Both the position numbers and the translations under genes were made by a program. A stretch of 64,000 nucleotides of DNA from Thecamonas trahens ATCC 50062. Lineage: Eukaryota > Protista > Apusomonadida. How positions within the stretch are numbered: the stretch's first letter is position 1; every line of letters begins with the position of its first letter. This document shows, one piece after another, positions 1 to 19,552 of the stretch. The stretch covers positions 1 to 64,000 of the forward strand of contig NW_013657610.1 of the NCBI RefSeq assembly GCF_000142905.1, read 5' to 3'. The notes under the pieces are model-generated. The model was not told the DNA's origin and did not search any database. It saw only the letters and a list, made by a program, of their open reading frames with translations.

Positions 1-1485
1 GCGAGGTCAGCCGGCCAGCTCTTCTTTGCTGGGCGTCGTGCTACCTCCACCTGACAGCGACGTACCTTGCCAACCCCACCCATGTCCCTCGCTCGTTGTC
101 CTCATCGCCGCCGCCCGCGCACGCACCCTCGCTCACGCCCCGCGGCCGCAATCTGATCTCTGCCATCGAGGAGTTGCGCATGCCGACTGCCACCGACCCC
201 ACCCTCGCTCGCAGCCGAGTGCTGCTGACACCAGCCCCATCGTCCTCCTCGCCGACGTTACCGCTGGCATGACGACTGCCACGCCATTCACGGGCTGGGC
301 AAACAACAAGCCGACCACGCTCCGTCCACCACAGCCGCGCTGCAGCCTGGACACCACCGCCCTGGTGGTCGATGCAACGTCGTCGTTCTTCCTCAAGAGC
401 GCGCTGCGGTTCCAGCTCGCCATCAAGCTAACAGCGGAAGCAACAAAGCCCTGCCCTTCTTCGCCCAGACGAATGGGACATCCGGTTGCTCGACGACAGC
501 GAGCACATGCCATCACCCCTCCACAGACTCGTCGTCGCCAGATCGCGCACACTCTGACCACATCCATGCTTCAGTCGGACCCCAGCCATTCCCTCTCCCA
601 TCGCTACACCCGAGCCACACATGCCGCGCCAGCTCCCAGCAAACGAGCACACGGCCCACACACACACGCGTGTGCTGGACATCCTCTCCAGCTCGATCTA
701 CCACCCCATCCTCGCATCGGCCTCCAATCGCCTCCTCAGCCACCCATCCGACGCCCCCCCAAGCCCGACGAACGATCCCGATCCGATGGGCCTCATCACC
801 ATCTTTGACGCCCCTTCCCAAATCAAACGACCGCAGATCCGTCGTCGGTGAGCTGGCTGCCATGAACCCCCACTGTGCACTCAACAAAGCTGATGCCCGC
901 ATTCCATCGCCATCTCAACTTGCATACGACTGCCCGATCGCTCCCTCACCCTCCCTCGCCCTAGCTACTCTGAACACAAGCCCCCACAGACACAGCCNNN
1001 NNNNNNNNNNNNNNNNNNNNNNNNNNNNNNNNNNNNNNNNNNNNNNNNNNNNNNNNNNNNNNNNNNNNNNNNNNNNNNNNNNNNNNNNNNNNNNNNNCAT
1101 GGCCATCAGCCCGATCCCATCTTCCATGACGCAGACAGCACCACCCTTTCACACCACTCTCTACCGCTATCCGTTGGATGAAGGCTCTAACAATACTAAC
1201 AATCAAAAAGCCAGGCGCAGGCACCGAGCTGCGACGGCATCGCAGCAGGAGTGTCGGTACCGCACGATCACGCCAGCATCGTCGCTCTCCCCCTTGCCGA
1301 CAATCGTGTCCATCCGTCCGCCGTGCCTCGCAGAAGACCAACTCTGACGTCGTCGCCATCGGCTTCACTCACCAAAGTCGTCATCAGCCGCCACATCGCC
1401 CGCGACAACCTCATCAGCTGCGCCCGCGGCGCTCACGCTCGTCGTCAACAGCGCCGTCAAACTCAGCAACGGGCTCATTCTCCGA

Positions 1486-2817
1486 TCATGCGCACCAACC
1501 ACCCTGGCACATCGACGCTCTGTCACAACTCCACGCCCGCCGTGGCCTCGTCCATCTCATCCGCGTCTGCCGATCGCTACGTCCTCGTCGAGGCTCGCCT
1601 TGGCGGCAGCTGCTCGGCCCGGATCGCCTCGATTTGGTCACCGCGCTGACTCGCAAGCGCGTAGCCACTGCACCGAGCCCAACAGCCCCGTGCGACTTGG
1701 TCGGCTGTAGATCGGGTCGGAGGGGGGTCGCAGTTGGGGCTGAGAAGAACGGGTGCGGTCGATCGAGCCGGGGTAAGGCTGGGTGCAGCAGTTGATCACC
1801 TCTCCGATGGTGCCGGCTGACATCAGAGTCTGGAACTCCGAGCTCGGCTCCCTGCCACGCCGCCACGGATTCCATCGAACGAGTCGACACGGTCTGCTGC
1901 CTCTCCTGCTTGCCACTTCTCAGCGCTGAAGTGCTTGAGCCGCTCGGCGCCGCATCGTCTACCGAGGCCACTGCCGACACGAACATACGCCAGACGCGCT
2001 CGGTGTCGTCGAGGCCATACAGCAGGTAGATGGCACACAAGATGGCCTCGGCTTGTACATCATAAGAGTCCGAAAGCACAACATCATCCATGCCAGTGGC
2101 CTTGAGATACTGTTGACACGCTTCCCGTGACTCCATGTCCTGCATGGCGCTCATCATCGGACCCACATCCATGGCGCTGTCCTCGAGTGAGAACAGCTGC
2201 ATCCGACTGACCCATAAGGGTGAGCACCGTGTCGCCGATAAATGCCAGCCGCTTGAACGGTGTGTCGTTCTTGTTCGACGCGATGGCCGTGGAAATGACC
2301 GCGTTCAGCCACTCGTAGCTGGCGGGCATGCCCAAGACAGCCACCGTGTCATGAACCCGCTTGCGGACCCCGTGCATCCGCAAGTGCTTGCGGCCCATGG
2401 CACCGCTTGGTCGATGGCGGCACCGCAATCTGTCGATGCCAGGAACTGAACCAAGCTTGTCGCATTGCCCATGACGCAGCTGTTGTCGTCATTGGCATCG
2501 TCGTCCACCGGCACAGCCTCTTTTTACTCGCGCCCAAGGACGGCCCAGAAAGAGGACACATCACCCCTGTCGACAACCTCGAGAGGATACGTCCAAAGGT
2601 GCTTCTTGTTTGACCGGTGCCACCAAAACGTGACCGATCGCGCCTTCTCGAGCTCTGCGCGGCCCTTGAAGCAGCGCATCAGCTCACCCCCGGCGCGAGA
2701 CGCCTTGCCCGACGACTGGTCCTCCTCGACAAACTTGGCGGGCACGATCCACTTCTCGGCAACAGTGGGCCTGCGATTGTAGGCATACTCGTGGTAGTGG
2801 ATGTGGCGGGCTGGGAG
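1486..2817 (-). pseudogene. RNase III-like domain gene, disrupted (pseudogene or low-quality sequence); 5' end runs into a gap
   Basis: Consecutive minus-strand ORF pieces join to give FKRLAFIGDTVLTL (RNase III signature ERLEFLGD-like) ... DVQAEAILCAIYLLYG (second motif DxxEAxxGAxYLD-like). Joining needs read-through of a TAA at 2524-2526, a -1 change near 2402 and a +1 change near 2212 (GGG run). Confidence 0.6.
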
Positions 2818-5042
2818 NNNNNNNNNNNNNNNNNNNNNNNNNNNNNNNNNNNNNNNNNNNNNNNNNNNNNNNNNNNNNNNNNNNNNNNNNNNNNNNNNNN
2901 NNNNNNNNNNNNNNNNNNNNNNNNNNNNNNNNNNNNNNNNNNNNNNNNNNNNNNNNNNNNNNNNNNNNNNNNNNNNNNNNNNNNNNNNNNNNNNNNNNNN
3001 NNNNNNNNNNNNNNNNNNNNNNNNNNNNNNNNNNNNNNNNNNNNNNNNNNNNNNNNNNNNNNNNNNNNNNNNNNNNNNNNNNNNNNNNNNNNNNNNNNNN
3101 NNNNNNNNNNNNNNNNNNNNNNNNNNNNNNNNNNNNNNNNNNNNNNNNNNNNNNNNNNNNNNNNNNNNNNNNNNNNNNNNNNNCGACCCAGTTGGACGGA
3201 GGTGGCGTGGCGAAGTCAAGCCGATGGCAACCTTGGCACCAGCTGGCAGCGGCATGGGATCGCCACTGGCTTCTGTGGTTGTCCGTGTCTGCGAAGTACA
3301 CGTGTTGGCCACGCTCGGATAGTGTGTGAAGGAGACGATGGTCTCGGCAAACTTGATAGCATCCTCGTCGGAAGGGCTGCTGGGGAAGTGGGCGTTGTGC
3401 CAACTCTCGTCTGCGCACACCTGAAGGACGCCCTCCTACCGGGCCTCGATCGCGTAAAAGCATCCAGCTCTGCTTGCTACGCTAACATGCCTTGCCTTGC
3501 CGCCATGGGTACGGAATGGGGACCGATGAACGGGTTGTCGACTTGGCGGAGATCCGTGTAGAAGCGGTGTGTTGTGTGGTAGTCGGTGTCGTAGCTCTGA
3601 ATCGTCCGTCGCCGAAAGAATTTGGTGATCACTGCTCCGCTCCCTCCAGCTTCCCATTCCATCCAAGCATCGACACACACTCATCGGACAGACTGACGGA
3701 TGATGCAGATATCCATCCTCTCCCATCCCATCACCTGCTTGCTGGTCACGAGCCTGCTGTCCAGCAACTGGCCAGTCGATAAAGCCATCCACGCATACAC
3801 CTCAGTCGTGGCCACGCCCCATGACGCACTCGCATCGCAGCGCTCGTCACAACTATGTACTCAGTCCGTGGCCCACATCCCCAGTACCAACCGTCCGATG
3901 ACCATTTACCCCCTCACGTCATGTCGTAGCCATTGCCGCAGGCTCATCGGCGCTCCACCGCGGCCATCGCCCCGATCGCAATCAGCATCATCACAGAGAC
4001 CCCCCCTGCCCACGCCCGCCGCACAGCATCCGCACTTTCCCACAACATGCCGTCCTTCTTACAGGCACACGTCCAGCAGATGTGAAAGTCGCACAACATG
4101 TAGTACCTATCGTCATCGCACCGGTTCTGGTGATTGCCGAGACAGACCACAGGCTCAAGCCGCATGGCGCTCGACCTCATCCATCCTCACGCGGGACACC
4201 AGCTTCGACATCGACCATGATCCCCATCGATNNNNNNNNNNNNNNNNNNNNNNNNNNNNNNNNNNNNNNNNNNNNNNNNNNNNNNNNNNNNNNNNNNNNN
4301 NNNNNNNNNNNNNNNNNNNNNNNNNNNNNNNNNNNNNNNNNNNNNNNNNNNNNNNNNNNNNNNNNNNNNNNNNNNNNNNNNNNNNNNNNNNNNNNNNNNN
4401 NNNNNNNNNNNNNNNNNNNNNNNNNNNNNNNNNNNNNNNNNNNNNNCAGAAGATAGGCAAGACCGAGGCGCAGTGGCCAGCAGACGTTGATCGAGACACC
4501 CACGAGCACAGCAGCGTGTTGGGCATGCCCGCAGAAGTCATCGACAACGTCCGGCGGAGGCACGAGTTGGAGAGAGGCCGACGGAGAGGCATGCCCTGGA
4601 GAGGGAAGAGCGAGACCCTTGCGGAGGTGATCAAGGCAGAGACCCATCCGACGGAGCGGGCGGAAGGGGCGGGCGGTGGCGGGTGGTGGCGGGGCTTCCC
4701 GGCAGAGGGGGCGGGGAAGGGCACGACGTCACAGTGCCGAGATTGACGTCACAGTGCCGGGAGGACCAATGGAGGGTGACGGGGTGGTCTGACGGGGACG
4801 ATGGATGATACGGGACCATGGGCGTGTACAGAAGGTGGTCGGGAGGATAAACAAGTGGGCAATGAGTATGGTGGGGGTGTCTGAGTGGTGGAGGGGGCTG
4901 TGATCCTGCCTGACGCGATCAGAGTCAATTCTTTTGGATGGCTTTGATGTCTGCCGAATGGCTGTGTGAGTGGGTGGGTGGCGGGGGGTATGGGGAAGGT
5001 GGGAAGGGTATATCTCTCTGTCTGACAGAGTGGAGAGGGAGT

Positions 5043-7439
5043 ATGGCTGCGAATGGTGCTGGACGAGTGGTGGACGTGAGGAAGGCGAGGACGGTGGAGG
5101 AGGTGAGGAGGGCTCTGCGGGATGGCGTGGGCGTGGGCGAGGTGAGGGCGAGGATTGGTTTCGTCAACAACAAGTCCTTCACCGACGCCATGGCCATGGT
5201 GGTGGCGGAGATGTGCCCCAACCTCACATCCCTCGACTTGAACGGCTGCTTCAACATCACCGATGCGGCAGTGGTCGCCCTCGCCGGTGGCTGCCCCAAC
5301 CTCACATCCCTCCGCTTGTACAACTGCTCCAACATCACCGATGCGGCAGTGGTCGCCCTCGCCGGTGGCTGCCCCAACCTCACATCCCTCGGCTTGCGCA
5401 ACTGCTCCAACATCACCGATGCGGCAGTGGTCGCCCTCACCGGTGGCTGCCCCAACCTCACATCCCTCTACTTGAACAACTGCTCCAACATCACCGATGC
5501 GGCAGTGGTCGCCCTCGCCGGTGGCTGCCCCAACCTCACATCCCTCGACTTGTGCAACTGCTCCAACATCACCGATGCGGCAGTGGTCGCCCTCACCGGT
5601 GGCTGCCCCAACCTCACATCCCTCCGCTTGGACTACTGCTCCAAGGTTACCCTCGACTTGCGTCGCGCGCGCACTACCATCGCCCAACCAGACTTCCCTG
5701 CATCGCAGCACGCCCATGCATTGCTTGACGTTGCTCAGGCCCATGTGCCCCATCCGGTGCATGCCATAGACCGCTGCAACCTCCTCTCCCTCGGCGCGCT
5801 CAACACGCTGCTTGCCAACGGCGCAGACCTTTACGATCTCGATGATGACAACACGCACGTGTACGTAGCTGCTCCCGCGGAGCGATCTGCAGCGTTCTCA
5901 TCTGCGATGGTCGCCTGGATCCGCGAGCATGGCGACCGCGCCACCGAGCTCGCCAACGCATCAACAGGCCACCGTCGCCCTCTTTGTCTCCTCCGCGCCT
6001 CACCACCTCCGATTCAGCCGACTTCTCTCCGAGTCATCACGCTGGTACAGACTCAAGCTGTTGAACCCACGTTCANNNNNNNNNNNNNNNNNNNNNNNNN
6101 NNNNNNNNNNNNNNNNNNNNNNNNNNNNNNNNNNNNNNNNNNNNNNNNNNNNNNNNNNNNNNNNNNNNNNNNNNNNNNNNNNNNNNNNNNNNNNNNNNNN
6201 NNNNNNNNNNNNNNNNNNNNNNNNNNNNNNNNNNNNNNNNNNNNNNNNNNNNNNNNNNNNNNNNNNNNNNNNNNNNNNNNNNNNNNNNNNNNNNNNNNNN
6301 NNNNNNNNNNNNNNNNNNNNNNNNNNNNNNNNNNNNNNNNNNNNNNNNNNNNNNNNNNNNNNNNNNNNNNNNNNNNNNNNNNNNNNNNNNNNNNNNNNNN
6401 NNNNNNNNNNNNNNNNNNNNNNNNNNNNNNNNNNNNNNNNNNNNNNNNNNNNNNNNNNNNNNNNNNNNNNNNNNNNNNNNNNNNNNNNNNNNNNNNNNNN
6501 NNNNNNNNNNNNNNNNNNNNNNNNNNNNNNNNNNNNNNNNNNNNNNNNNNNNNNNNNNNNNNNNNNNNNNNNNNNNNNNNNNNNNNNNNNNNNNNNNNNN
6601 NNNNNNNNNNNNNNNNNNNNNNNNNNNNNNNNNNNNNNNNNNNNNNNNNNNNNNNNNNNNNNNNNNNNNNNNNNNNNNNNNNNNNNNNNNNNNNNNNNNN
6701 NNNNNNNNNNNNNNNNNNNNNNNNNNNNNNNNNNNNNTTCATGCTGCAGCCGGACAACACGCACGTGTACGTAGCTGCTCCCGCGGAGCGATCTACAGCG
6801 TTCTCATCTGCGATGGTCGCCTGGATCCGCGAGCATGGCGACGGCGCCACCGAGCTCGCCAACGGCATCAACAAGGCCACTCTCGCCCTCTTTGTCGTCC
6901 TCCGCGCCTCACCGACCGTCCCGTTCTCCATCCCTGTCTTTGCCTTCCTCATTCACTCCGGCGCCGACATCAATGCCCTCGAGCCCATCGCTGGTCTCCG
7001 CCCGCTCCACATCGCTGTGCTCTTGTCCAACGTCTTGGCCACCATGGCACTGCTTGCAGCCGGCGCCGATGTGTGGGCACCGAATCACATCGGTGTTCCC
7101 CCGCTCTCCACCGCAGCGATCGAACTCGCCGAGCCGAAGAGTCGGGAGGTCTACAACCTTGTCACAGGAACCATCCCTGTCCCCGCAGCCGTCGACGATT
7201 TTGTCCAAGAGGCCATCGCCGCGGGTGGTGTCGTTGATCGGCCCGCCGCATCTGGCAACCGGCCTCGATCACGCGTTGACGAGCTGGAAGCTGAGCTGTC
7301 TGCGACCAGAGACGAGCTGGCTCTGATGCAGGACAAGCTGACCGTCGCCGAGGGTGATATCCGGGCTCTCCGCGACGACCGCGTCAAGCTCATCCAGCAC
7401 TTTGACGAGGCCGTCGCCAACTTCCAAGCACGCCGCTAG
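5043..7439 (+). CDS. Cysteine-containing LRR (AMN1/FBXL-type) + ankyrin repeat + C-terminal coiled-coil protein; interrupted by an assembly gap
   Basis: 5.5 copies of CPNLTSLxLxxCxNITDAAVVALxGG; ankyrin motifs FLIHSGADINA...GLRPLHIAV...LLAAGADVWAPNHIGVPPL; heptad tail VDELEAELSATRDELALMQDKL. Sequence on both sides of gap 6076-6737 overlaps, so the true length is uncertain. Start codon is inferred. Confidence 0.8.
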   Translation: MAANGAGRVVDVRKARTVEEVRRALRDGVGVGEVRARIGFVNNKSFTDAMAMVVAEMCPNLTSLDLNGCFNITDAAVVALAGGCPNLTSLRLYNCSNITDAAVVALAGGCPNLTSLGLRNCSNITDAAVVALTGGCPNLTSLYLNNCSNITDAAVVALAGGCPNLTSLDLCNCSNITDAAVVALTGGCPNLTSLRLDYCSKVTLDLRRARTTIAQPDFPASQHAHALLDVAQAHVPHPVHAIDRCNLLSLGALNTLLANGADLYDLDDDNTHVYVAAPAERSAAFSSAMVAWIREHGDRATELANASTGHRRPLCLLRASPPPIQPTSLRVITLVQTQAVEPTFXXXXXXXXXXXXXXXXXXXXXXXXXXXXXXXXXXXXXXXXXXXXXXXXXXXXXXXXXXXXXXXXXXXXXXXXXXXXXXXXXXXXXXXXXXXXXXXXXXXXXXXXXXXXXXXXXXXXXXXXXXXXXXXXXXXXXXXXXXXXXXXXXXXXXXXXXXXXXXXXXXXXXXXXXXXXXXXXXXXXXXXXXXXXXXXXXXXXXXXXXXXXXXXXXXXXXXXXXXXXXFMLQPDNTHVYVAAPAERSTAFSSAMVAWIREHGDGATELANGINKATLALFVVLRASPTVPFSIPVFAFLIHSGADINALEPIAGLRPLHIAVLLSNVLATMALLAAGADVWAPNHIGVPPLSTAAIELAEPKSREVYNLVTGTIPVPAAVDDFVQEAIAAGGVVDRPAASGNRPRSRVDELEAELSATRDELALMQDKLTVAEGDIRALRDDRVKLIQHFDEAVANFQARR
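5214..5645 (+). repeat. 78-bp tandem repeat x5.5 encoding LRR units
   Basis: Units start at 5214, 5292, 5370, 5448, 5526 and 5604 (partial), each beginning tgccccaacctcacatccctc. Confidence 0.97.
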
Positions 7440-8488
7440 TCCTACGGCATGAGTGGCGATGCGCCGCGAGGCTTGTCGAGACGTCTCCCGGCGGCGGCGA
7501 CAGCGAGAACACGACGTTGAATTGCTAGCTCGACATGAAGCTCCAGCCCATGTCACCGCTCTCTCTCACTCTCTCGGTGGTCGCTCCTGCCAAACGATAA
7601 CAATCGCTTTTTCCCTCACTCCCGCATGTGCGGCCCACCGCCACCGGCAAGCCCCTGACGACATCCGGCCGACTGGCAGCGATAGCTGCTACCACACCTC
7701 CCACAGGACTCTCTCCGGGACAAACAAGACCACCATGACCGGGTCAAAGGGAAAGGAGGGCATGCTGCCACGGGCAAGCAGCGTACGTATCCCCTCTCTC
7801 CCCTCCTCTCCCCGCACAGATTACACTCGCTAGAGCACCAGTATGATGTGACCCATGTCTATGGCGGTGGTAGCGCAAGTCGCCGCAGGAAACCGTCGTC
7901 CACTTTTTTTCGGCCTCTGCAAACAGCCAACATAGCCATTCCCCCACAGCCCTCCTCCCCTCCTCCCCCCTCATCACCTAGTTGCTGCCATACCATGTAC
8001 TATGTCGCCATGCACTGTTGCTGTTCTGCTGTTTTGCGCCACCCACAGGTGGATGCTGCCTCCTCCTCCCCCCCCCCCGCTCACTGTCGCGACGCGCCAG
8101 TACAACGNNNNNNNNNNNNNNNNNNNNNNNNNNNNNNNNNNNNNNNNNNNNNNNNNNNNNNNNNNNNNNNNNNNNNNNNNNNNNNNNNNNNNNNNNNNNN
8201 NNNNNNNNNNNNNNNNNNNNNNNNNNNNNNNNNNNNNNNNNNNNNNNNNNNNNNNNNNNNNNNNNNNNNNNNNNNNNTTCCCCCCCTTTGTGCTCGGTAG
8301 CAACGGCGGCGTTTTCGTTGGAATCGGGCACACAAACACAAACGAACGTTTTGATGAAGAAGACAAAAAATACTTGCGTCTCTGCCCTCCCCTCCCTCTC
8401 CCTCCCCCCCCTCCCCCCCCCCCCCCCGACCACAATGTTGTGGCGCGCATTAACGAACCATTGTCTGACTTTGCTGTGTCGTGTGCAG

Positions 8489-11400
8489 GACTTGTCTGCT
8501 GAGACCAAGAACTGCATCATTTTCGACACCATCGCCGCTGCGGACAATGCCTGCAGCGATGCCGAGTTCGATGACATCAAGGCAAGTCTGGAGCGCGACT
8601 ACCCGAGCGCATTCACTGCCAACAAAGCCGGCCTGGACGGCCTGGACATGCTGCTGAGCACCATCATGTCGAACGATGAGTCCGTGAGCATGGACGAGGA
8701 GGCCACCTCAAGCCGCACCCCCTCGATCACCGTGGAGTGGCTGCGCGAGGGTTGCTCGGCAACGTCGTCCGTCGCCGACATCCACGCCTCGGCGAGTTGG
8801 CTGATCAAGCTCGAGGGCAAGCCGTTTAACGCGCGGGTCATCTTTGACATCATCGCGGGACAGCGGAGCTACAGCTTGGTCGTCTGCCTCGTCAACAACG
8901 AGAGTGAGGACACGCCCGAGCACGCCTTTACCTGCCGATCGGGCGTCTGGGCTGCGGCGTTGAGCCCCAACTCGGGCCAGATGATGCCCGGTCAGTTTGA
9001 GGCGCCGACGTCGAACGAGCCCGATCCTGATCCCAAGGCCGTCTTCCGCCGCTGCAAGAACTGCAGCAAGTACCGTCTCGTCTCGCAAACCCATGCATTC
9101 ATGAGAGGTGTCTGCGGCCTGGGCTATGAGAGCCAGTGCTCCGACCCGCCGGTCACCTTTATCGCTGCCCTCTTGCTCTCCAACTCGCCAGCGCTTGCCA
9201 GCGCCAACGGCGAGGTGGATGACGACCTGGTGGGACGCGCGCTTGCGCTCGCCAGCGATCGTGCCATCAGCCATGAGCACCTGGAAGCGCTGTCCACGTG
9301 GGCCGGCGGCGAGCTCAACAAGCGGCGGCCGGGCCGGAGGAGCCGCAAGGGCCTCCTTCTCCGGCCGAGCAAGTCGGACGATGTAGTCAACGTCATCCTC
9401 GACATGGCCAAGCTCTTTGCCATCCCGCACGTCGCCGGTGGCACTTACCTCATCACTGCCCGCAATCTCGGCATCTTTGTCTGCGATAGCCTCGGCCTCG
9501 CCAGCAGCAACTTCCGCACGCTCGTCAAGGACACGCTGCAGTGCGCGGTGCCGGCGGCAGGCGGTGCCACACTCTTCCATCTCCTTCAATCAAGCCATGC
9601 GTTCGAGGCGGGGAGGAAGCACCTCTACGATAGCGCGTACAACGACATCGGCGGCATCTTTGGCGCCGCCTTTGTTTCGGGAGACACCGCCGAGTCGTCT
9701 CAGGACATGCGGCAGGTCCTCACCACCATCGAGTTCGAGTCGGACCGCCGAGCCGAAGATCTCAAGTCAAAGGCCAAGCAGTGGTCAAAGCCCCGATCCG
9801 AGACCTACAAGAGCCTGGCGACAAAGCTGGACTTTAGCCAGGCCTTCAACGATCAAGCCGAGTCGTTGATCCTCTTCCACGGCGCCTCGCGTCTCGGCAA
9901 GTCGACCACACAGGACGTCCTGCTCGAGACCTCCATGCCTAGCGCCGCCGATTTTCTGTCTCAAGCCAGCAATGGCGCAGCCGCCGCCTTTGTTTCCGCC
10001 GGAATGGACAAAGACGACGCGGACGTGGCCTTCAACTTTGACTTTCCCGCCGCCGATGCCGAGCAGCTCTGGTGCGCCAAGAAGGAGAGTCGGAGGCACA
10101 CCAATCGCGCCGGCTCGGCTCAAGCGCCGTTCATCCTCCCAACCCGCTGCGCCGTCGGCCACACTACCGTCATAGACATCGAGGTCCGCTACGGCCGCTC
10201 GTTTGAGGTCGTCGTCGAGATGATGTCCAAGGAGGCGATCTTGGAGCTCATCAGCGTCAACTGCGACGACAACGACTGGCTCAAGAGCTTTGTCGCCAAC
10301 GTGATGGGCAAGAAGAAGCCCAAGAGCTTCCGGTCCAAGGACAAGGATAGTCTTGCGGCTGTGAACAAGCTCAAGGAGCTCATCAACGAGTCATCGAGCT
10401 CATCCTCTCCTGCCGATGCTGTTCTCGACTTTCTTGCCGCTCATGGCGCCGACGTGCGCGGTGCCCTCGACCGGAAGATCATCGTCTCTGCCCCAGCCTC
10501 GTCGGAGCCCCACATTGGCCAGGCCATTGTCCGTGCTGTCATCGCCGCCGCAAACCGGACGGACGACCCCAAGGCTGCGCTCGTCGACTCGGATCCAACC
10601 TCGCTCTCGTTCGGCTCGTTCGAGCACCTCCTCAGCGCCATGTGCGGGCTGGATGGCAAGCTGCGCAACTCGGTGCTGGCCAACTTTGTCAGCCGTGTCA
10701 CGGCCTTTCTCCCGGCCTCGATCATCCCCCCGCGCGGCGTGTTGAAGGACACAGCCGGTACCATCTCTGGCAACAGCATCGTCCGGGGTGTCACCGCTTC
10801 TGCCCTCAAGTCGGCCGCCTTTGTCGTCATCCTCCTCGCGGACGGCGAGAACATCGTTGACAACGACAACGCCAGCGGCACGCTTGATCCGTTCTTCGCC
10901 CATGCCAAGCCATGGCTCGCCATCATTAGAGACATCAAGAACGAGCTCGAGAGCGTGAATGGCGACCGCGATGCTGCCATCTCCAAGCTCACGACCATGG
11001 CCACCACCCGCGACGGCTCCACTGTCAACTTTGCGGTGGTCATGCCCATCAAGCCCAGCGACGAGGACGTCATGGTCCTGCACCACAACGATTGCGTCAC
11101 CAACCTCCGCGAAGGCCTGAACGAGCTGTTCTTCAATCAGCTCCAACTCGTCATCCCAGACTCGCTCAAGGAGCACGGTGAGGTTCCCAACGATCTTGGT
11201 GACGCCTTGGAGCTCCTGTCCGAAGCGTTGTCCTCGGAGCGCTGCCTCTCTGTCTCACGCCTCGCCACCATCAAGTACTCGAGCTGGGCGCTGAACAACA
11301 TTTCGCTTGCCGACTTTGGCCAGGCCTCCAGTCACGATGCTGTCGTATTTGCCGATGAGGGCATGATCCGGCCGAGCGTGGATAGCTCGGGCATTGTGGG

Positions 11401-14400
11401 CTTTCTGGGACGGCTCGACTTTTTCGCCCGCGGCGTCATCCAGGACATGCTCGACAGGGTGAGCAGAGCCGTCGAGGCTGCAGAGAGGGTCTTGACTCCA
11501 ATCGACGACAACGCCCACACCTTGATCAGCAACCTCGTCAAGCAGAAGAGGAAGCTGAAGAGCGAGGCCGGGTCCTACATGGCCGTCGTGGCCGAGGCCG
11601 ATGATCCGAGCTGTGTCGTCCTCCGCCTTGGTAGTGCGGACGTCAAGAAGCTGGCCATCGACCTCACCTCCAAGTGGAAAGAGGATCTGCGCCTCGCTGT
11701 CCTGGAGGCTCTCAGCTTGACTTCCCCGATGATGGCAGGCCCGATCCAGACACCAACAACGAGTTCTTTAGCTCGTTGACCCAGTCCCAGCTCCATCGCG
11801 TGATGCGGTCCAGGCTCACTGTCGCCGTTCGCCAGCTCCAGATCACCGTCAAGTCCGACAACATCCAGTCCGAGCTCGTCACCAGCCTGGCAACGACGCT
11901 CGCGGACTTTCTTCACCTCGTCCTCACCAACCACATCACGAGGCCCGAGAGCCGGGAGCAGCTGGTCAGCAGCCTCGAGGACAGCATCCAGCTCGTCGCA
12001 GTCCGCCTCGTGCAGAAGCTCATCAAGACCGAGCCGATCCTCTCCAGGGACCCCAACGCGATCAATAAGGTCGGTGGCCCGCTTGCAAAGCTTGTCGAGA
12101 AGATCGTGCACGGCGCCAAGTCAATGACGTGGGAGTCGCTGCGGAAGAGCATGGAAGACGTCCTCGTCAACGTCCTCGTCTCGCAGCCGGACGGCCTGAA
12201 TCGTGACAAGGACTTGCTCGTGCTGCCCAAGTCGACTCTGATGAGCACCTCGGCGTTCCGCCACAACCTCTCGCTCCTGTCTCGCCTCATTTTCACCGTC
12301 TTCCGCCCGCGCGCCATTGACGCCACGGTCTCGGACTTGAAGGACTCGACGCTCCACAGGGTCGACTCGTTTCTCCTCGATTCCTTTGTGACCAAGATCC
12401 TCTGGGACAAGACGCGCAGAGTGGTGATGACCGATCAGTGTGCCGAGTTTGTCCGGAGCATCATGGGCAAGATCAACTCGGTCAAGGCCAGCCTCACCAT
12501 CTCGCTGAGCGAGCCGAGCAATTTCGGCCGCCGCTTTGGCGCCCCGCTCGTCGCAGCCTGTCATCGCAGCCGGGTCTGCGACTTGGTTGAGAGCCACAGT
12601 GAGCTCGACAGCGGCTCGCTCTCTTTTGCCATCGGAGACAGCATCCTCGAGCCGCCCACGACGCTCATGGGTGCGGAGGAAGCCGATGCCGTGCTGCGCG
12701 CCGCCCTTGGCCCGGAGCCCATCCCGAGCATCAGCGAGGTGGACGTGACCGTCACGCTCGCTAAGCTCTCTTCCGTCCCCCGCCTGGCAATCGTGTCATT
12801 GGCGCCTGGGTGCGGACCATCGCCACGTCGTCGCCCGACGTGAGCAAGCCGTTCATCACCGACGATCTGCATCTCCACGTTGCCCGCCTCCTCGGAAACG
12901 GCGATGACGCGACGATCACGTCGCTGAAAGAGCTTCATTTGGCCCTCATGCCCAGTGGGACCAGCGTCGACGAGCTGGCGTCGTCCGAAGCCGCCGATGT
13001 TCTCCTGAGGTTCCTCTCGTGGATGCTCCGTGTTCGCTTTGCCGTCGTCGCTGTCAGCAGCAAGCCCGAGGTTGTCCACATTGTCCCGAGCGTCGAAACC
13101 GGCGCTCCTGAGCCGCTCGTTGTCAGTGATCTTCATCCGTATGTGCTCTTCTACATCGCGCCGCTCCGACGTGGCCGGCATAGCTCAGACGGAGACAAGG
13201 AATTGGCCGGCTGGAGCAGCCTCACGCTCACCGATGACTATCGCATGCCCCTCGGCTCGCGCCGCGGTATGCCCGCCGCCAGCGATGGTTTTCAGCCGAC
13301 GACGCATCCTGGCAAGCGCCGGCGTGCCGACGATGACGGCATCGAGCTCGAGAGCGGCGGTCTGGAGGCCATGGTCGTGTCCGATAGCGACGACGCTGGC
13401 GTCGCCGGGCCATCGACGGCTAGCCACGTGCTGACCGCTCCTCCACCGGCCAAGGTGGCGCGCACCACCTCGCGCTCAGCGGACATGACCGCCATGTTCC
13501 CTCCGCCCACCCGCCACGAGCTCAAGCCGATCACCCTCCACCAGTTTCGGCAGACCTACCTCCGGGCGAGGTCGCTCGCCCAGTACCAGGCCGTCAAGAC
13601 CAAAGATCACCTGAATGTCAAGATCACCATGCCTGCCGCTATGTCCGGGCCGTGCCAGACCGTCACGCTCTCTTCATCCGACTTTGACGAGGTCGCCGCA
13701 ACCTCGCTCATCTTCGTCTCGGGCGCCGCTCGTGTCCTGAGCAACGAGTGCAAGATCTTGCAGCCGCCCACCAAGCCGCACACCCGCATCTGCCAGGACT
13801 CCCAGGAGCAGATGTTTCAGGAAGACCGCGTCTATGACCACGATCTGGCCGGTGACGATCGCGTGTACTACGACGAGGGCGTACTGCTGGTGTGCGATGG
13901 CGTGACAGGCGACGTGGCCCACGAGGCAGAGTTCGTCTCGGGCAAGATCGTCTCGTCCAGCATGGTGGTGGGCATGGAGGGCTTCCGCAGATTGGGACAG
14001 TGGGATATCACGAGCCAGTTGGAGCTGCCCAAGCTCGCCTGGCATTTCACCATCATGGCCTCCTTGTGGGCCAAGCCGGTCATCCAGCGCATGCTCCTGG
14101 CCAAGCGGTTCAACACGGCGGCGCTCAACCCGCAGGATCCCATGGTGCGCAAGCAGGCCGAGCAGCAGTGGCAGGAGATGACAATCGCCTTGCCCAATGC
14201 AGTTGAGGCGACTCGGAACAGCGAGCTGCAGCAGAAAGTGACTCATCAGCCGACCACGTTCAAGATCAAGAGACAGCCGAGCTCGTCGTCCACCCTCCTC
14301 ACCGCGGCCATCACCGGGACCAAACTTTCGGTCTTTGTGGCTGGCGACTCGCGGCTGATGGTGATCCGCTGGAACGAGACGACGAGGCAGTTTGAGCCGG

Positions 14401-17836: not shown

Positions 17837-19552
17837 ATGCCGCTCGACCTGCTTCCACGCGAGATAGTGGCGTACATCGGCCGCTGGCTGCCGGCCCGCG
17901 ACGCGGTGGCGCTGGCCTCGACCTGCCGGACACTCCACCGAGCTGTGCTGGGCAACCCGATCACCGCCGCCCACATCCAGGCCCACATCGGCTACGCGGG
18001 CTGTGTCAAGCACGGCCTCTGGCGAGCTGCCCTCCGCGCCCTCCGCTGCAGGTCGCGCCACGGGGGGCTGGCCGGCCGCATCGCCACCGCCCCGGCCGCC
18101 CTGCTGCTGCCCATTGTCATCGGCTTTGGCCGCGATGCAGGGAGCGACGACGAGGACAGTCATCTCGCCCGCGAGCTGCTGCTCAGAGAGCTACAATCGA
18201 TGGACCTGCGGTGCGCGGTGCGCGGCAAGAAGGAGGAGCTCGCGCTGCGTGACATGCCCTCGATCGCAAGCGTGGCAACGGTGTCGCTCCCTGTGGCGAC
18301 GGTGGCCATCTTGCAAGGCGAAGCTGTGGCGGCCGAGATGCTCATGCGGTGCAAGCCGATGGGTACCAACGACGCCAACGTTGCTGTCATTTTCGCGGCC
18401 AGGCGCGGCCTGGGCAGCATTGTCCGCATCATCATCGAGACGTGTGCGCCAGAGGAGCCCTTTATCGCCGACGCCGTCTCGGCCGGGCAGCGGTACCCGG
18501 CGGTGATCGAGGCGGTCATGACCGCAACCGCAACGAGCTATGAGCTGGAGATGACCTGTGCCCAAAGCATCGGACGGGCCGACAACGTCGACGGTGTGGC
18601 GATCGTCCTCGGCGGCGGGCGGGTGGCGTCAGCGTCGGCTCTGGCCAGGGTGATGTTGGCGGCGACGGGCTCGCCAGCGGTCATCACCGCAGTTCTCGAC
18701 CACGAGAGCGTGGATGCGGCGGCAGTCGGGCGCGTAGCACTCGAGAGCTTTGTCAAGGATCGGTCGCGAAATGTGCTCATCGGCGCTCTCATTGCTGACG
18801 AGCGCATCGACCTCAGCGGGCTGGGCAACAAGATGCTGAGGAACGCGGTGCTGGGCCGCCACGAGACGCTCGTGGAGATGCTGATAGCGATGGACAGCGA
18901 GCGGATCCAGCTGACGACGCCGCACAAGGCGGAGCTCGGGATGCTTGTAGCGTGGGCGACGCCGGAGATGACGACGCGCATACTGGCGCACCACACCGTG
19001 GGTGCGACGGCAGTGAGCACGATGGTCTGTGAGGCGGCGATGCGCGGGCGGGAGACAATGGTGCATGCGCTGCTGGCGTACACAGAGAGCGCGGGGATGG
19101 CAGCGGCGATTGATATCGGAGCGGCGTTCCGGCTGGCGTGCAAAGAGGGCCAGGTGGCGGTGGTGGCGGCTCTGATGAGCGACGGACGCATCGGGCACCA
19201 GGAGCGGCTGGTGGCGCTGCGGCTGGCGGCATGCAACAGACAAGCTGGCGCAGTGGCGGCATTGCTGGACGGCGGCGTGTCGCCCCTGCCGATTCTCGAC
19301 GAGAGCGTGGCCATTGCCATCCAGCACGGACACAGTGCAGTGCTCGCGGCGATCATCAGCGATGAGCGGGTGGCCAACCCGGTGGCGATGGTGGCAGCGG
19401 CGGTCCGGCGGGCAACGCGGGTGATGGATCCGGCGGAGAAGCCGAGGTACAGTCTGCGGTGGGACAAGGTCAAGTGCATGCTCGCCGAGCACCCGCGGAT
19501 CAGCCCAGAGGGCTACATGACGATTGTACGGGCGGCGGGGACGTGGTGGTAA
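17837..19552 (+). CDS. F-box-like + degenerate ankyrin repeat protein
   Basis: N-terminus MPLDLLPREIVAYIGRWLPARDAVALASTCRTLH fits the F-box consensus; ankyrin-like units AFRLACKEGQVAVVAALM, ALRLAACNRQAGAVAALL, VAIAIQHGHSAVLAAIISDERV. Confidence 0.8.
   Translation: MPLDLLPREIVAYIGRWLPARDAVALASTCRTLHRAVLGNPITAAHIQAHIGYAGCVKHGLWRAALRALRCRSRHGGLAGRIATAPAALLLPIVIGFGRDAGSDDEDSHLARELLLRELQSMDLRCAVRGKKEELALRDMPSIASVATVSLPVATVAILQGEAVAAEMLMRCKPMGTNDANVAVIFAARRGLGSIVRIIIETCAPEEPFIADAVSAGQRYPAVIEAVMTATATSYELEMTCAQSIGRADNVDGVAIVLGGGRVASASALARVMLAATGSPAVITAVLDHESVDAAAVGRVALESFVKDRSRNVLIGALIADERIDLSGLGNKMLRNAVLGRHETLVEMLIAMDSERIQLTTPHKAELGMLVAWATPEMTTRILAHHTVGATAVSTMVCEAAMRGRETMVHALLAYTESAGMAAAIDIGAAFRLACKEGQVAVVAALMSDGRIGHQERLVALRLAACNRQAGAVAALLDGGVSPLPILDESVAIAIQHGHSAVLAAIISDERVANPVAMVAAAVRRATRVMDPAEKPRYSLRWDKVKCMLAEHPRISPEGYMTIVRAAGTWW

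What the first reader, a model, noticed from the sequence alone, without database searches (positions are those of the whole stretch)
5214..5645. LRR array with hypervariable NRC codons and no synonymous differences: candidate diversified receptor
Seen: the five full 78-bp units are nucleotide-identical except at the x positions of the LxLxx strand and two minor sites. Position 1 codons across the six units are gac,cgc,ggc,tac,gac,cgc (D,R,G,Y,D,R); position 2 are aac,tac,cgc,aac,tgc,gac (N,Y,R,N,C,D); position 3 are ggc,aac x4,tac. Every variable codon has the form N-(A/G)-C and can be derived from AAC, and I see no synonymous change. Established: these positions form the concave binding face that is diversified in plant NLRs and jawless-fish VLRs, and AAC->NNC is the pattern made by diversity-generating retroelements. 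Inference: a protist LRR-ankyrin-coiled-coil receptor whose scaffold is homogenised while binding residues are diversified, by cassette shuffling, gene conversion, selection or targeted mutagenesis. Caveat: other adenines in the unit (aca, gca) are invariant and no reverse transcriptase is in the window, which argues against a true DGR.
Basis: partly seen in the sequence, partly recalled or inferred. Interest (0 to 1): 0.85.

Follow-up and report, generated by a model that had tools for sequence, protein, structure and literature searches.

The report
Hypervariable LRR repeat family in Thecamonas
A gene of the free-living flagellate Thecamonas trahens carries near-identical 26-residue leucine-rich repeats that differ almost only at three residues on the predicted binding face. 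It belongs to a family of a dozen or more such genes near scaffold ends that evolve like the fast-diversifying recognition proteins of fungi, but their ligand and role are unknown.

Summary
Window 5214-5644 has five full 78-bp units and one capping unit of a cysteine-containing (FBXL2-type) LRR. They differ at 8 columns, all first or second codon positions, six of them in codons 8, 10 and 11.

The genome is Thecamonas trahens ATCC 50062, and this array is one of at least 12. I extracted 105 clean units, all within about 25 kb of scaffold ends, inside a shared block of at least 7.7 kb. Across the family, codons 8, 10 and 11 stay hypervariable (pN about 0.45-0.5) while scaffold pS is 0.05-0.07. 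Synonymous change in those three codons is no higher than in the scaffold.

A DGR is rejected: no reverse transcriptase lies on any array contig, and the AAC at codon 3 is invariant.

Unit types recur within and between arrays, and arrays are mosaics. The best reading is germline unit shuffling plus diversifying selection on the concave face of a cytosolic LRR-ankyrin-coiled-coil protein with no F-box or NOD domain.

Function, expression and any somatic variation remain untested. This scan had already found the same family on other pieces of this genome (s1-742072, s1-751747, s1-756537, s1-756605).

The parts
1..7727 (.). Repeated block shared with at least 10 other scaffold ends. It holds about 5 kb of upstream sequence with no convincing ORF, then the LRR-ANK gene. 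Homology stops just after the gene's stop codon.
   Evidence: blastn of window 1-14000 against the paralogous loci gives 87-98% identity to C34, C113, C61, C74, C96, C102, C73, C48, C60 and C87. No TTAGGG arrays occur at these ends, although TTAGGG is this genome's telomere repeat.
5043..5213 (+). Start codon and N-terminal cap, 57 aa beginning MAANGAGR. It is modelled as two degenerate strand-helix units and ends in a half-unit (SFTDAMAMVVAEM). No F-box.
   Evidence: The same N-terminus is present in 9 paralogues. AlphaFold2 places strands at residues 8-11 and 36-39 and helices at 18-28 and 48-57. Pfam finds no F-box, and a six-frame PF12937 search gives no hit at any family locus.
5214..5603 (+). 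Five full 78-bp (26-aa) cysteine-containing LRR units with consensus CPNLTSLxLxxCSNITDAAVVALAGG.
   Evidence: TRF period 78; unit table; Pfam LRR_6 and LRR_4; FBXL2 chain 6o60_C at E 1e-54 by sequence and 5.9e-14 by Foldseek.
5235..5246 (+). Unit 1 hypervariable block, codons 8-11: GAC TTG AAC GGC (D L N G).
5313..5324 (+). Unit 2 hypervariable block: CGC TTG TAC AAC (R L Y N). This unit type was found only here.
5391..5402 (+). Unit 3 hypervariable block: GGC TTG CGC AAC (G L R N). The type recurs in arrays C113 (3 copies) and C61.
5469..5480 (+). Unit 4 hypervariable block: TAC TTG AAC AAC (Y L N N). The type recurs in C74 (2 copies) and C61.
5547..5558 (+). Unit 5 hypervariable block: GAC TTG TGC AAC (D L C N). 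The whole 78-mer is identical to a unit in array C34.
5604..5681 (+). Terminal capping unit (CPNLTSLRLDYCSKVTLDL...). Only its first 41 bases match the repeat. Its hypervariable block is at 5625-5636.
   Evidence: The CSKVTLDL cap is conserved in 10 paralogues.
5682..6075 (+). Post-LRR linker and the first ankyrin-like module, cut off by the assembly gap.
   Evidence: ORF and paralogue alignment. The model is of low confidence here.
6076..6737 (.). Assembly gap of 662 N inside the gene. The open frame across it is not evidence of continuity. Judging by paralogues, it probably hides part of a copy-number-variable ankyrin module.
   Evidence: The annotated model AMSG_12420 (P0006) jumps the gap.
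6738..7265 (+). Ankyrin-repeat region.
   Evidence: Pfam Ank_4 at 3.3e-6 and Ank at 8.8e-4. The AlphaFold2 model on alignment A1 shows paired helices at residues 46-143. The Atlas returns ANK clusters only.
7266..7439 (+). C-terminal long single helix (residues 177-232, pLDDT about 90), read as a coiled coil, followed by the stop codon at 7437-7439.
   Evidence: Heptad-like ELADTKA repeats of variable number occupy the same place in paralogues.

Best explanation
The array is the binding module of one member (AMSG_12420) of a young multigene family in Thecamonas trahens. So far the family has been found only in this species and in a few near-identical environmental fragments. The genes sit near scaffold ends.

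The proteins look cytosolic. Each has an N-terminal cap, 4 to about 30 near-identical FBXL2-type LRRs, ankyrin repeats and a C-terminal coiled coil.

Shown:
- Units are duplicated, lost and exchanged within and between arrays, which keeps the scaffold DNA uniform.
- Residues on and just after the concave beta-strand are driven apart or kept apart. These are unit positions 8, 10 and 11, and more weakly 6, 13 and 14.
- The variety in this window's array is mostly a draw from a shared pool of unit types, not a set of new local mutations.

Inferred:
- The exchange works by unequal crossing-over and ectopic gene conversion in the germline.
- The excess of replacement changes is due to diversifying selection.
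- The concave face binds variable ligands (prey, pathogen or non-self molecules), while the ankyrin and coiled-coil part supplies a constant partner and oligomerisation.
For: Family and location:
- At least 125 unit matches in 13 places.
- Arrays on C70, C74, C34, C73 (two arrays), C113, C61, C60, C48, C102, C96 and C87, all within about 25 kb of a scaffold end.
- The C-terminal domain gives the same census, plus a diverged member on C39.

Selection:
- Per-codon entropy peaks at codons 8, 10 and 11.
- Within arrays, pN at these codons is 0.34-0.66, against scaffold pS 0-0.12 and scaffold pN 0.00-0.035.
- Minimal change counts are 27 non-synonymous to 3 synonymous in the 3 hypervariable codons, and 15 to 15 in 20 scaffold codons (Fisher P = 0.0015; counts taken, test).
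- That is about 1 synonymous change per hypervariable codon against 0.75 per scaffold codon, so there is no general local hypermutation.

Shuffling:
- 45 distinct residue triplets among 105 units, against 76.6 +/- 2.7 expected if the three positions were independent.
- Four of the window's five unit types recur in other arrays, one as an identical 78-mer.
- The commonest scaffold haplotype is carried by 29 of 105 units in 10 arrays, including 3 of the window's 5.
- 60 of 190 scaffold site pairs show all four gametes.
- Units with the C73a-type scaffold sit inside arrays C73b, C113, C48 and C102.
- Array C73a is internally uniform (pS 0.067) but differs from the rest at pS 0.28.
- Between paralogues, segments of 99.9% identity lie next to segments of 92%.

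Structure:
- The LRR part of the model has pLDDT 84-93 and strands spanning unit positions 6-10.
- The best solved relatives are FBXL2 and FBXL17.

Precedent: the same regime is described for the WD40, ANK and TPR repeats of fungal NLR-like proteins (PMC1805685, PMC4986451).
Against: - No ligand, expression or localisation data. No RNA run holds the sequence.
- No recognised signalling or effector domain. Pfam, a 1.8-billion-protein profile search and the Atlas give only LRR and ANK.
- Synonymous divergence in the flanks (0.07-0.09) equals that of the scaffold. For most arrays a recent burst of duplication therefore cannot be told apart from continuing homogenisation.
- pN/pS on 78-bp recombining units is a crude test. 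No recombination-aware site model was run.
- The assembly is a gapped draft. Unit order and number are unverified, and two arrays (C74, C113) carry frame breaks.
- Telomere adjacency is not shown.
Confidence: 0.7

Rival explanations
1. Targeted mutagenesis. A DGR-like adenine-specific retro-mutator, or another programmed hypermutation process, writes AAC-to-NNC changes into three codons of each unit.
For: - In the window every variable codon is N-(A/G)-C.
- Genome-wide, A is the commonest base at five of the six first and second positions of the hypervariable codons, and the third base is mostly C.
- Units with AAC at all three positions exist (type NNN, 3 units).
Against: - The seven reverse-transcriptase matches in the genome all lie on other contigs: C33, C25, C20, C53 (two), C10 and C84.
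- All unit copies found lie inside coding arrays. No separate template copy turned up.
- AAC at codon 3 is invariant in 103 of 105 units. The adenines of ACA (codon 5), GAT (codon 17) and GCA (codon 19) are invariant too.
- 27 of the 315 hypervariable codons (AAG, GAA, CGG, TTT, TGG) cannot come from AAC-to-NNC.
- Non-adenine sites also vary, for example TCC/ACC/AGC at codon 6 and GCC/ACC at codon 24.
- From general knowledge, DGRs are known only from prokaryotes and their viruses.
Confidence: 0.02
2. Neutral explanation. The units were amplified recently, and positions 8, 10 and 11 are merely unconstrained surface residues drifting freely, with no diversifying selection.
For: - The family is young: pS is 0.05-0.09 throughout.
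- The non-repeat flanks show relaxed pN/pS of about 0.65-1.0.
Against: - Under neutrality, pN at these codons should be about equal to pS (0.05-0.09). It is 0.45-0.5, five to ten times higher, in every array with four or more units.
- Synonymous changes in the same codons are not elevated.
- The residues are enriched in N, Y, S, D and G.
Confidence: 0.06
3. Assembly artefact. Short-read or 454 collapse of many paralogous units produced a chimeric array, so the apparent pattern is a product of misassembly.
For: - N gaps flank almost every array, and the window gene is itself broken by 662 N.
- No contig from any run spans the array.
- Frame breaks occur in the C74 and C113 arrays.
Against: - Misassembly can scramble unit order, but it cannot confine the differences to three codons across 105 units.
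- Short contigs from four runs, including an estuary and a marine metagenome, show their listed differences within the array only at codons 6, 10 and 11.
- The array sits inside an ungapped 1.6-kb stretch, 4447-6075.
Confidence: 0.05
4. Functional alternative, not exclusive of the best explanation. The proteins are substrate receptors of a ubiquitin ligase, like FBXL proteins. Their fast-evolving LRR face would target foreign proteins for degradation, with the ligase link made by something other than an F-box.
For: - The LRRs are of the FBXL2/FBXL17 type, E 1e-54.
- The genome encodes about 80 F-box-like loci scoring over the Pfam cut-off.
- From general knowledge, adaptive evolution of F-box adaptor families is documented in nematodes and plants.
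Against: - No F-box in the protein.
- No F-box in six-frame searches at any of the family's loci.
- No BTB, SOCS or RING domain was found.
Confidence: 0.1

Closest known systems
Podospora anserina NWD/HNWD family and other fungal NLR-like proteins with highly internally conserved WD40, ANK or TPR repeats (PMC1805685, PMC4986451)
   Same: - Repeats are more than 85% identical within and between paralogues.
- Repeat number varies between family members.
- Units are exchanged within and between loci.
- Three to five positions per repeat on the binding surface are under diversifying selection.
- The family is restricted to one lineage.
   Different: - The repeat here is an LRR. PMC4986451 reports that no LRR motifs were found in fungal NLRs.
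- There is no NACHT or NB-ARC domain and no N-terminal effector domain, so it is not an NLR.
- The organism is an apusomonad.
- Repeat-number polymorphism between isolates, and any role in allorecognition, are untested.
Ectocarpus LRR-ROCO candidate receptors with LRR exon shuffling (PMC3341825)
   Same: - LRR units are shuffled among paralogues in a protist lineage.
- The positively selected sites lie on the concave face.
- The genes are clustered and turn over quickly.
   Different: - In Ectocarpus each 24-aa LRR is its own exon and shuffling is exon-based. Here the 26-aa units form one uninterrupted ORF.
- ROCO proteins carry a Roc-COR GTPase. This family has only ankyrin repeats and a coiled coil.
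FBXL2 / FBXL17 (cysteine-containing LRR domains of SCF substrate receptors; PDB 6o60, 6wcq)
   Same: - The same 26-residue LRR subtype and fold.
- From general knowledge, the concave face is the substrate-binding face.
   Different: - No F-box.
- The units are near-identical instead of individually diverged.
- The C-terminal ankyrin repeats and coiled coil are absent from FBXL proteins.
Variable lymphocyte receptors of jawless fish
   Same: - Diversity sits at concave LRR positions.
- Diversity is combinatorial and built from unit 'cassettes'.
   Different: - VLR genes are incomplete in the germline and are assembled somatically from flanking non-coding cassettes.
- Here every array is a complete germline ORF, and all units found lie inside such arrays.
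- Somatic change is untested.
Diversity-generating retroelements
   Same: Variable codons are mostly NNC and rich in A.
   Different: - No RT lies on any contig that carries an array.
- There is no template repeat.
- Adenines elsewhere in the unit are invariant.
- Non-adenine sites also vary.

Membership tests
Cysteine-containing (CC-type, FBXL-like) LRR subfamily | Unit of about 26 residues with the pattern C-x-x-L-x-x-L-x-L-x-x-C-x-x-(I/L)-T-D, and similarity to FBXL LRR domains | tested here: met
   - Unit table.
- Pfam LRR_6 at 6e-14 for the window's N-terminal part and 2e-51 for the paralogue.
- FBXL2 6o60_C at E 1e-54.
- Foldseek top hit 6o60_C at 5.9e-14, rmsd 2.9.
F-box/LRR (FBXL) SCF substrate receptors, the name some databases give these proteins | An N-terminal F-box that binds Skp1 | tested here: not met
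   No F-box family among the Pfam hits for the complete paralogue or the window's N-terminal part. Of 101 six-frame PF12937 matches in the genome, none lies at a family locus.
F-box/LRR (FBXL) SCF substrate receptors | Physical association with Skp1 and cullin | not testable with these tools
Diversity-generating retroelement target gene | A reverse transcriptase encoded nearby | tested here: not met
   The seven PF00078 matches are all on contigs that carry no array.
Diversity-generating retroelement target gene | A template repeat that differs from the variable repeat only at adenines, with all template adenines mutable | tested here: not met
   - No unit copy found outside the coding arrays.
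- AAC at codon 3 is invariant in 103 of 105 units.
- 27 of 315 hypervariable codons are incompatible with AAC-to-NNC.
Highly internally conserved repeat proteins with hypervariable sites (fungal NWD type) | At least 85% identity between repeats of one protein, over 100 aa or more | tested here: met
   TRF reports 93% nucleotide matches. From the unit table, units within arrays differ at 0 to about 6 of 26 residues.
Highly internally conserved repeat proteins with hypervariable sites (fungal NWD type) | Exchange of repeats within and between loci, and variable repeat number | tested here: met
   - Identical units and shared unit types across arrays.
- Mosaic scaffold haplotypes and four-gamete pairs.
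- 4 to about 30 units per paralogue.
- Between-isolate polymorphism was not tested.
Highly internally conserved repeat proteins with hypervariable sites (fungal NWD type) | Positive selection at a few positions on the interaction surface | tested here: met
   - pN 0.45-0.5 against pS 0.05-0.07.
- Fisher P = 0.0015.
- The positions lie on and after the concave strand.
- Caveat: this is a counting method, with no recombination-aware site model.
NLR / STAND receptors | A central NACHT or NB-ARC NTPase domain | tested here: not met
   Pfam finds only LRR and Ank families in the complete 856-aa paralogue.
VLR-type somatically assembled receptors | An incomplete germline gene flanked by non-coding donor cassettes | tested here: not met
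   Arrays are complete ORFs with an N-cap and a C-cap, and all units found lie inside such arrays.
VLR-type somatically assembled receptors | Somatic (clonal) rearrangement of the array | not testable with these tools
   Only short Logan contigs were available. Cross-mapping of paralogous units makes heterogeneity uninterpretable.
Ectocarpus-type exon-shuffled LRR receptors | One LRR per exon, separated by phase-compatible introns | tested here: not met
   Units abut head to tail in one open frame with no indels.

The most novel reading that the evidence does not exclude
The 12 or more scaffold-end arrays, with over 110 unit 'cassettes', recombine during clonal (mitotic) growth. Individual cell lineages of Thecamonas would then carry different LRR arrays. 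That would be a combinatorial, VLR-like recognition repertoire in a unicellular relative of animals and fungi, not just a product of germline evolution.
Probability: 0.05. Interest if true: 0.9.

Novelty: new variant of a known kind. Interest (0 to 1): 0.55.

Why it matters
Near-identical repeats with a few hypervariable surface residues mark proteins that must keep pace with changing ligands. Until now this regime has been described in detail for the WD40, ANK and TPR repeats of fungal NLR-like proteins and, through exon shuffling, for brown-algal LRRs.

This family shows the same regime in a different setting:
- The repeat is an FBXL-type LRR.
- The protein has neither a NOD domain nor an F-box.
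- The organism is an apusomonad, one of the closest unicellular relatives of animals plus fungi.

That suggests repeat shuffling plus selection is a general and repeatedly invented route to recognition diversity in eukaryotes. It also gives a concrete, small and culturable system in which to look for the ligands. Those could be bacterial prey, viruses or conspecific non-self.

I found no paper describing this family.

Tried and rejected
- DGR or a nearby RT: rejected.
- F-box in an upstream exon: none.
- Telomere adjacency: TTAGGG arrays exist at the starts of C1 and C2, but none at any family-bearing scaffold end I read. 'Subtelomeric' is therefore not shown.
- ORFs in the shared upstream or distal block: only low-complexity frames, nothing convincing.
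- Reads: the four runs I laid were Logan contigs of 60-330 bases that cannot span the array. No RNA holder was found, so there is no test of unit order, expression or clonal heterogeneity.
- Profile search of the C-terminal half against 1.8 billion proteins: swamped by generic ankyrin proteins. The full-length matches I fetched were T. trahens paralogues or short, closely similar fragments.
- Metagenome contig scan: one true relative, a 1155-bp contig holding the C-terminal half only. The rest were generic ANK.
- ESM Atlas: ANK clusters only.
- Redundant contigs as a source of inflated counts: C102/C60 and C87/C61 are mosaics of 92-100% identity, not simple duplicates.
- No PAML or HyPhy was on hand, so no formal site-model test was run.
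Full report
**1. The observation.**
Window 5214-5644 is a head-to-tail array of period 78, with 5.5 copies, 93% matches and no indels. Read in frame, it gives five full units of the form CPNLTSLxLxxCSNITDAAVVALAGG. A sixth unit keeps only its first 41 bases and runs into a conserved cap, CSKVTLDL.

The five full units differ at 8 of 78 columns:
- positions 1 and 2 of codons 8, 10 and 11
- position 2 of codon 13, in unit 1
- position 1 of codon 24

None is a third position. There are no synonymous differences, against 45 pairwise non-synonymous ones, 35 of them in three codons.

On its own this small array is only moderately improbable. P = 0.03 for no third-position column, and P = 0.012 for six of eight columns falling in three codons. 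The case rests on the rest of the genome.

**2. What it belongs to.**
Protein searches name the genome as Thecamonas trahens ATCC 50062 and the window's gene as AMSG_12420 (P0006). The window is C70:1-64000 of a 28.7-Mb assembly in 131 gapped scaffolds.

The 78-bp unit matches at least 125 places in 13 regions. I fetched them and extracted 111 units, 105 of them clean, from arrays on C70, C74, C34, C73 (two arrays), C113, C61, C60, C48, C102 and C87. A further partial array on C96 matched the unit search but yielded no clean unit. Arrays hold from 4 to about 30 units.

Every array lies within about 1-25 kb of a scaffold end. On every scaffold longer than 12 kb, all but one of the genes (C73a, see below) point towards the interior.

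The window's first 7.7 kb is itself a repeated block, 87-98% identical to at least 10 other scaffold ends. It consists of about 5 kb upstream without a convincing ORF, then the gene. On C73 the arrangement differs: one copy is inverted, and three or four members cluster within 25 kb.

TTAGGG is this genome's telomere repeat, seen at the starts of C1 and C2. None of the family-bearing ends I read reaches such an array. 'Scaffold-terminal' is therefore shown; 'subtelomeric' is not.

**3. The protein.**
A gap-free paralogue (L033:2842-5412, minus strand, 856 aa) shows the full architecture:
- a 57-aa N-terminal cap
- 18 LRRs
- a linker
- ankyrin repeats
- a C-terminal helix

Pfam finds LRR_6, LRR_4 and Ank families and nothing else meaningful.

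The window's own gene is broken by 662 N at 6076-6737. The frame across the gap is meaningless, and the annotated model simply skips it. Its C-terminal part (6738-7439) is 99% identical in protein (98.5% in DNA) to the C74 paralogue.

An AlphaFold2 model of residues 1-344 is confident over the LRR part, with pLDDT 84-93. It places each beta-strand on unit positions 6-10 (6-8 in the end units). By the established geometry of LRR solenoids, the conserved L7 and L9 face the core. Positions 6, 8 and 10 then face the concave surface, and 11, 13 and 14 follow in the ascending loop.

The closest solved structures are FBXL2 (E 1e-54 by sequence, 5.9e-14 by Foldseek) and FBXL17.

A model of the C-terminal 233 residues, built on nine paralogues, shows ankyrin-like helix pairs and one 56-residue helix at pLDDT about 90, which I read as a coiled coil.

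There is no F-box. None appears among the Pfam hits, and none of 101 six-frame F-box-like matches in the genome lies at a family locus. There is also no N-terminal hydrophobic stretch. The only hydropathy peak lies inside ankyrin helices. The protein is therefore probably cytosolic or nuclear.

**4. How the units vary genome-wide.**

| Codons | Amino-acid entropy |
|---|---|
| 8, 10, 11 | 2.8, 3.1, 1.9 bits |
| 6, 13, 14 | 1.3, 0.8, 1.2 bits |
| the other 20 codons | 0.8 bits or less; 13 of them at 0.14 or less |

Pairwise counts within arrays:
- pN at codons 8, 10 and 11 is 0.34-0.66.
- Scaffold pS is 0-0.12, and 0.05-0.07 in the three large arrays.
- Scaffold pN is 0.00-0.035.

Minimal change counts are 27 non-synonymous to 3 synonymous in the three hypervariable codons, against 15 to 15 in twenty scaffold codons (Fisher P = 0.0015; counts, test). 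Synonymous change per codon is thus the same in hypervariable and scaffold codons, and only replacement change is in excess, about twelve-fold. That argues for selection and against a general local mutator.

The residues used are mainly N, Y, S, D and G.

TCC, ATC, CTC, ACC, GCC, TTC, TTT, AAG, GAA, CGG and TGG also occur. The mostly retained third-position C follows from the low synonymous divergence everywhere.

**5. Shuffling rather than local mutation.**
The three hypervariable positions are strongly linked. There are 45 distinct triplets among 105 units, against 76.6 +/- 2.7 expected under independence.

Unit types recur within arrays in multi-unit blocks, for example KSS-YSS-DNN in C74 and KYN-LGN in C34. 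They also recur between arrays.

Four of the window's five types occur elsewhere:
- GRN in C113 and C61
- YNN in C74 and C61
- DNG in C73a
- DCN as an identical 78-mer in C34

The adjacent pair GRN-YNN is shared with C61.

With the six variable codons masked, the commonest scaffold haplotype is carried by 29 of 105 units in 10 arrays, including three of the window's five units. That is why this array shows no synonymous difference.

Further signs of exchange:
- Sixty of 190 pairs of informative scaffold sites show all four gametes within 78 bp.
- Units with the distinctive C73a-type scaffold, marked by linked changes at codons 21-23 and 25, sit inside arrays C73b, C113, C48 and C102.
- Paralogous loci are mosaics of segments at 99.9% and 92% identity.

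Array C73a is internally uniform (pS 0.067) yet differs from all the others at pS 0.28, the same as its flanks at 0.27. Arrays therefore turn over as units after the genes diverge.

A caveat applies to the other arrays. Flank pS (0.07-0.09) equals scaffold pS (0.074). For them, a recent burst of duplication cannot be separated from continuing homogenisation.

Two older family members have ordinary, individually diverged LRRs in front of the same ankyrin and coiled-coil tail. These are AMSG_11238 on C73 and a gene at C39:27.5 kb. This suggests the uniform arrays arose by amplification of one unit.

**6. A DGR, or another mutator.**
No reverse transcriptase lies on any array-bearing contig. All unit copies I found are in coding arrays. 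AAC at codon 3, the same codon as the supposed substrate, is invariant in 103 of 105 units. The adenines of codons 5, 17 and 19 are invariant as well. Of 315 hypervariable codons, 27 cannot derive from AAC-to-NNC, and non-adenine sites vary too. I put this reading at about 2%.

**7. Independent data.**
I laid four runs: two from the species (2010 and 2020), one estuary metagenome and one marine metagenome. They hold fragments of the family at 90-100% identity. All are short Logan contigs.

Every difference listed inside the array falls at position 1 or 2 of codon 6, 10 or 11. This must largely reflect cross-mapping of paralogous units. It agrees with the pattern and shows that the family exists in wild populations. 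It cannot test unit order, clonal heterogeneity or expression. No run on record as RNA held the stretch.

**8. Comparison and novelty.**
The regime matches the one described for the Podospora NWD family and other fungal NLR-like proteins:
- highly internally conserved repeats
- exchange within and between loci
- variable repeat number
- three to five positively selected surface positions

(PMC1805685, PMC4986451.) Those papers concern WD40, ANK and TPR repeats, and PMC4986451 states that no LRR motifs were found in fungal NLRs.

Brown-algal LRR-ROCO genes shuffle LRRs as exons (PMC3341825). Here the units form one continuous ORF, and there is no NOD, ROCO or F-box domain.

Literature searches found nothing on this family in Thecamonas. 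I therefore class it as a new variant of a known kind.

Earlier follow-ups in this scan reached the same reading on other pieces of the genome. I re-derived it here from the sequences. This report adds:
- the evidence that unit types are linked and shared between arrays
- the comparison of scaffold with flank divergence
- the mosaic-array evidence
- the negative F-box, RT and telomere searches at the family's own loci

**9. Verdict.**

The mechanism is most likely germline unit shuffling plus diversifying selection, at about 0.7.

Noticed in passing
window 5847-6075 and 6738-6928; P0001, P0002, P0003: The ankyrin region contains a module of about 150 aa that varies in copy number between paralogues. 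AMSG_12426 (P0001) has extra copies. The window's assembly gap lies inside such a duplication, so sequence on its two sides is a diverged duplicate.
   Followed up: partly
alignment A1, columns 193-227 (paralogues on C48, C61, C96, C73, C34); window 7266-7436 lacks them: The coiled-coil segment carries 7-residue ELADTKA-like repeats whose number differs between paralogues, from 0 to about 6. This is a second copy-number-variable repeat in the same proteins.
   Followed up: no
G000:C73 around 20 kb (AMSG_11238, P0005) and G000:C39:27518-28171 (P0016): Two diverged family members have 6-7 ordinary, non-uniform CC-type LRRs in front of the same ankyrin and coiled-coil tail. They probably represent the ancestral state, before one unit was amplified.
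   Followed up: partly
L031 (C74), minus strand, unit at about 4249-4404; L035 (C113) 3413-3491: Two arrays contain a frame break or stop inside a unit. These are either pseudogenes or homopolymer errors in a draft assembly.
   Followed up: no
window 1-4900 and homologous stretches of C34, C61, C74, C73, C96, C102, C113: About 5 kb upstream of the gene is conserved at 89-97% among scaffold ends, yet shows only low-complexity ORFs. Its nature (promoter region, non-coding repeat, degraded element) is unknown.
   Followed up: partly
G000:C25:3798-4265 and G000:C20:8442-8753: Two of the genome's seven reverse-transcriptase matches lie in long open frames (1125 and 1131 aa) within 10 kb of scaffold starts. 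They may be end-associated retroelements and are unrelated to the LRR arrays.
   Followed up: no
whole genome; one match at window 17846-17950: About 80 loci match the F-box-like Pfam model above its cut-off, which is a large F-box repertoire for a 29-Mb genome. One weak match lies in the window, in another gene.
   Followed up: no
runs X4, X7, X9, X10, X13; L048 (metagenome contig Ga0207991_1051976): Estuary and marine metagenomes from several studies hold fragments of this family at 90% identity or more. One 1155-bp contig encodes only the C-terminal half, preceded by stop codons. Thecamonas-like organisms carrying the family appear to be widespread.
   Followed up: partly
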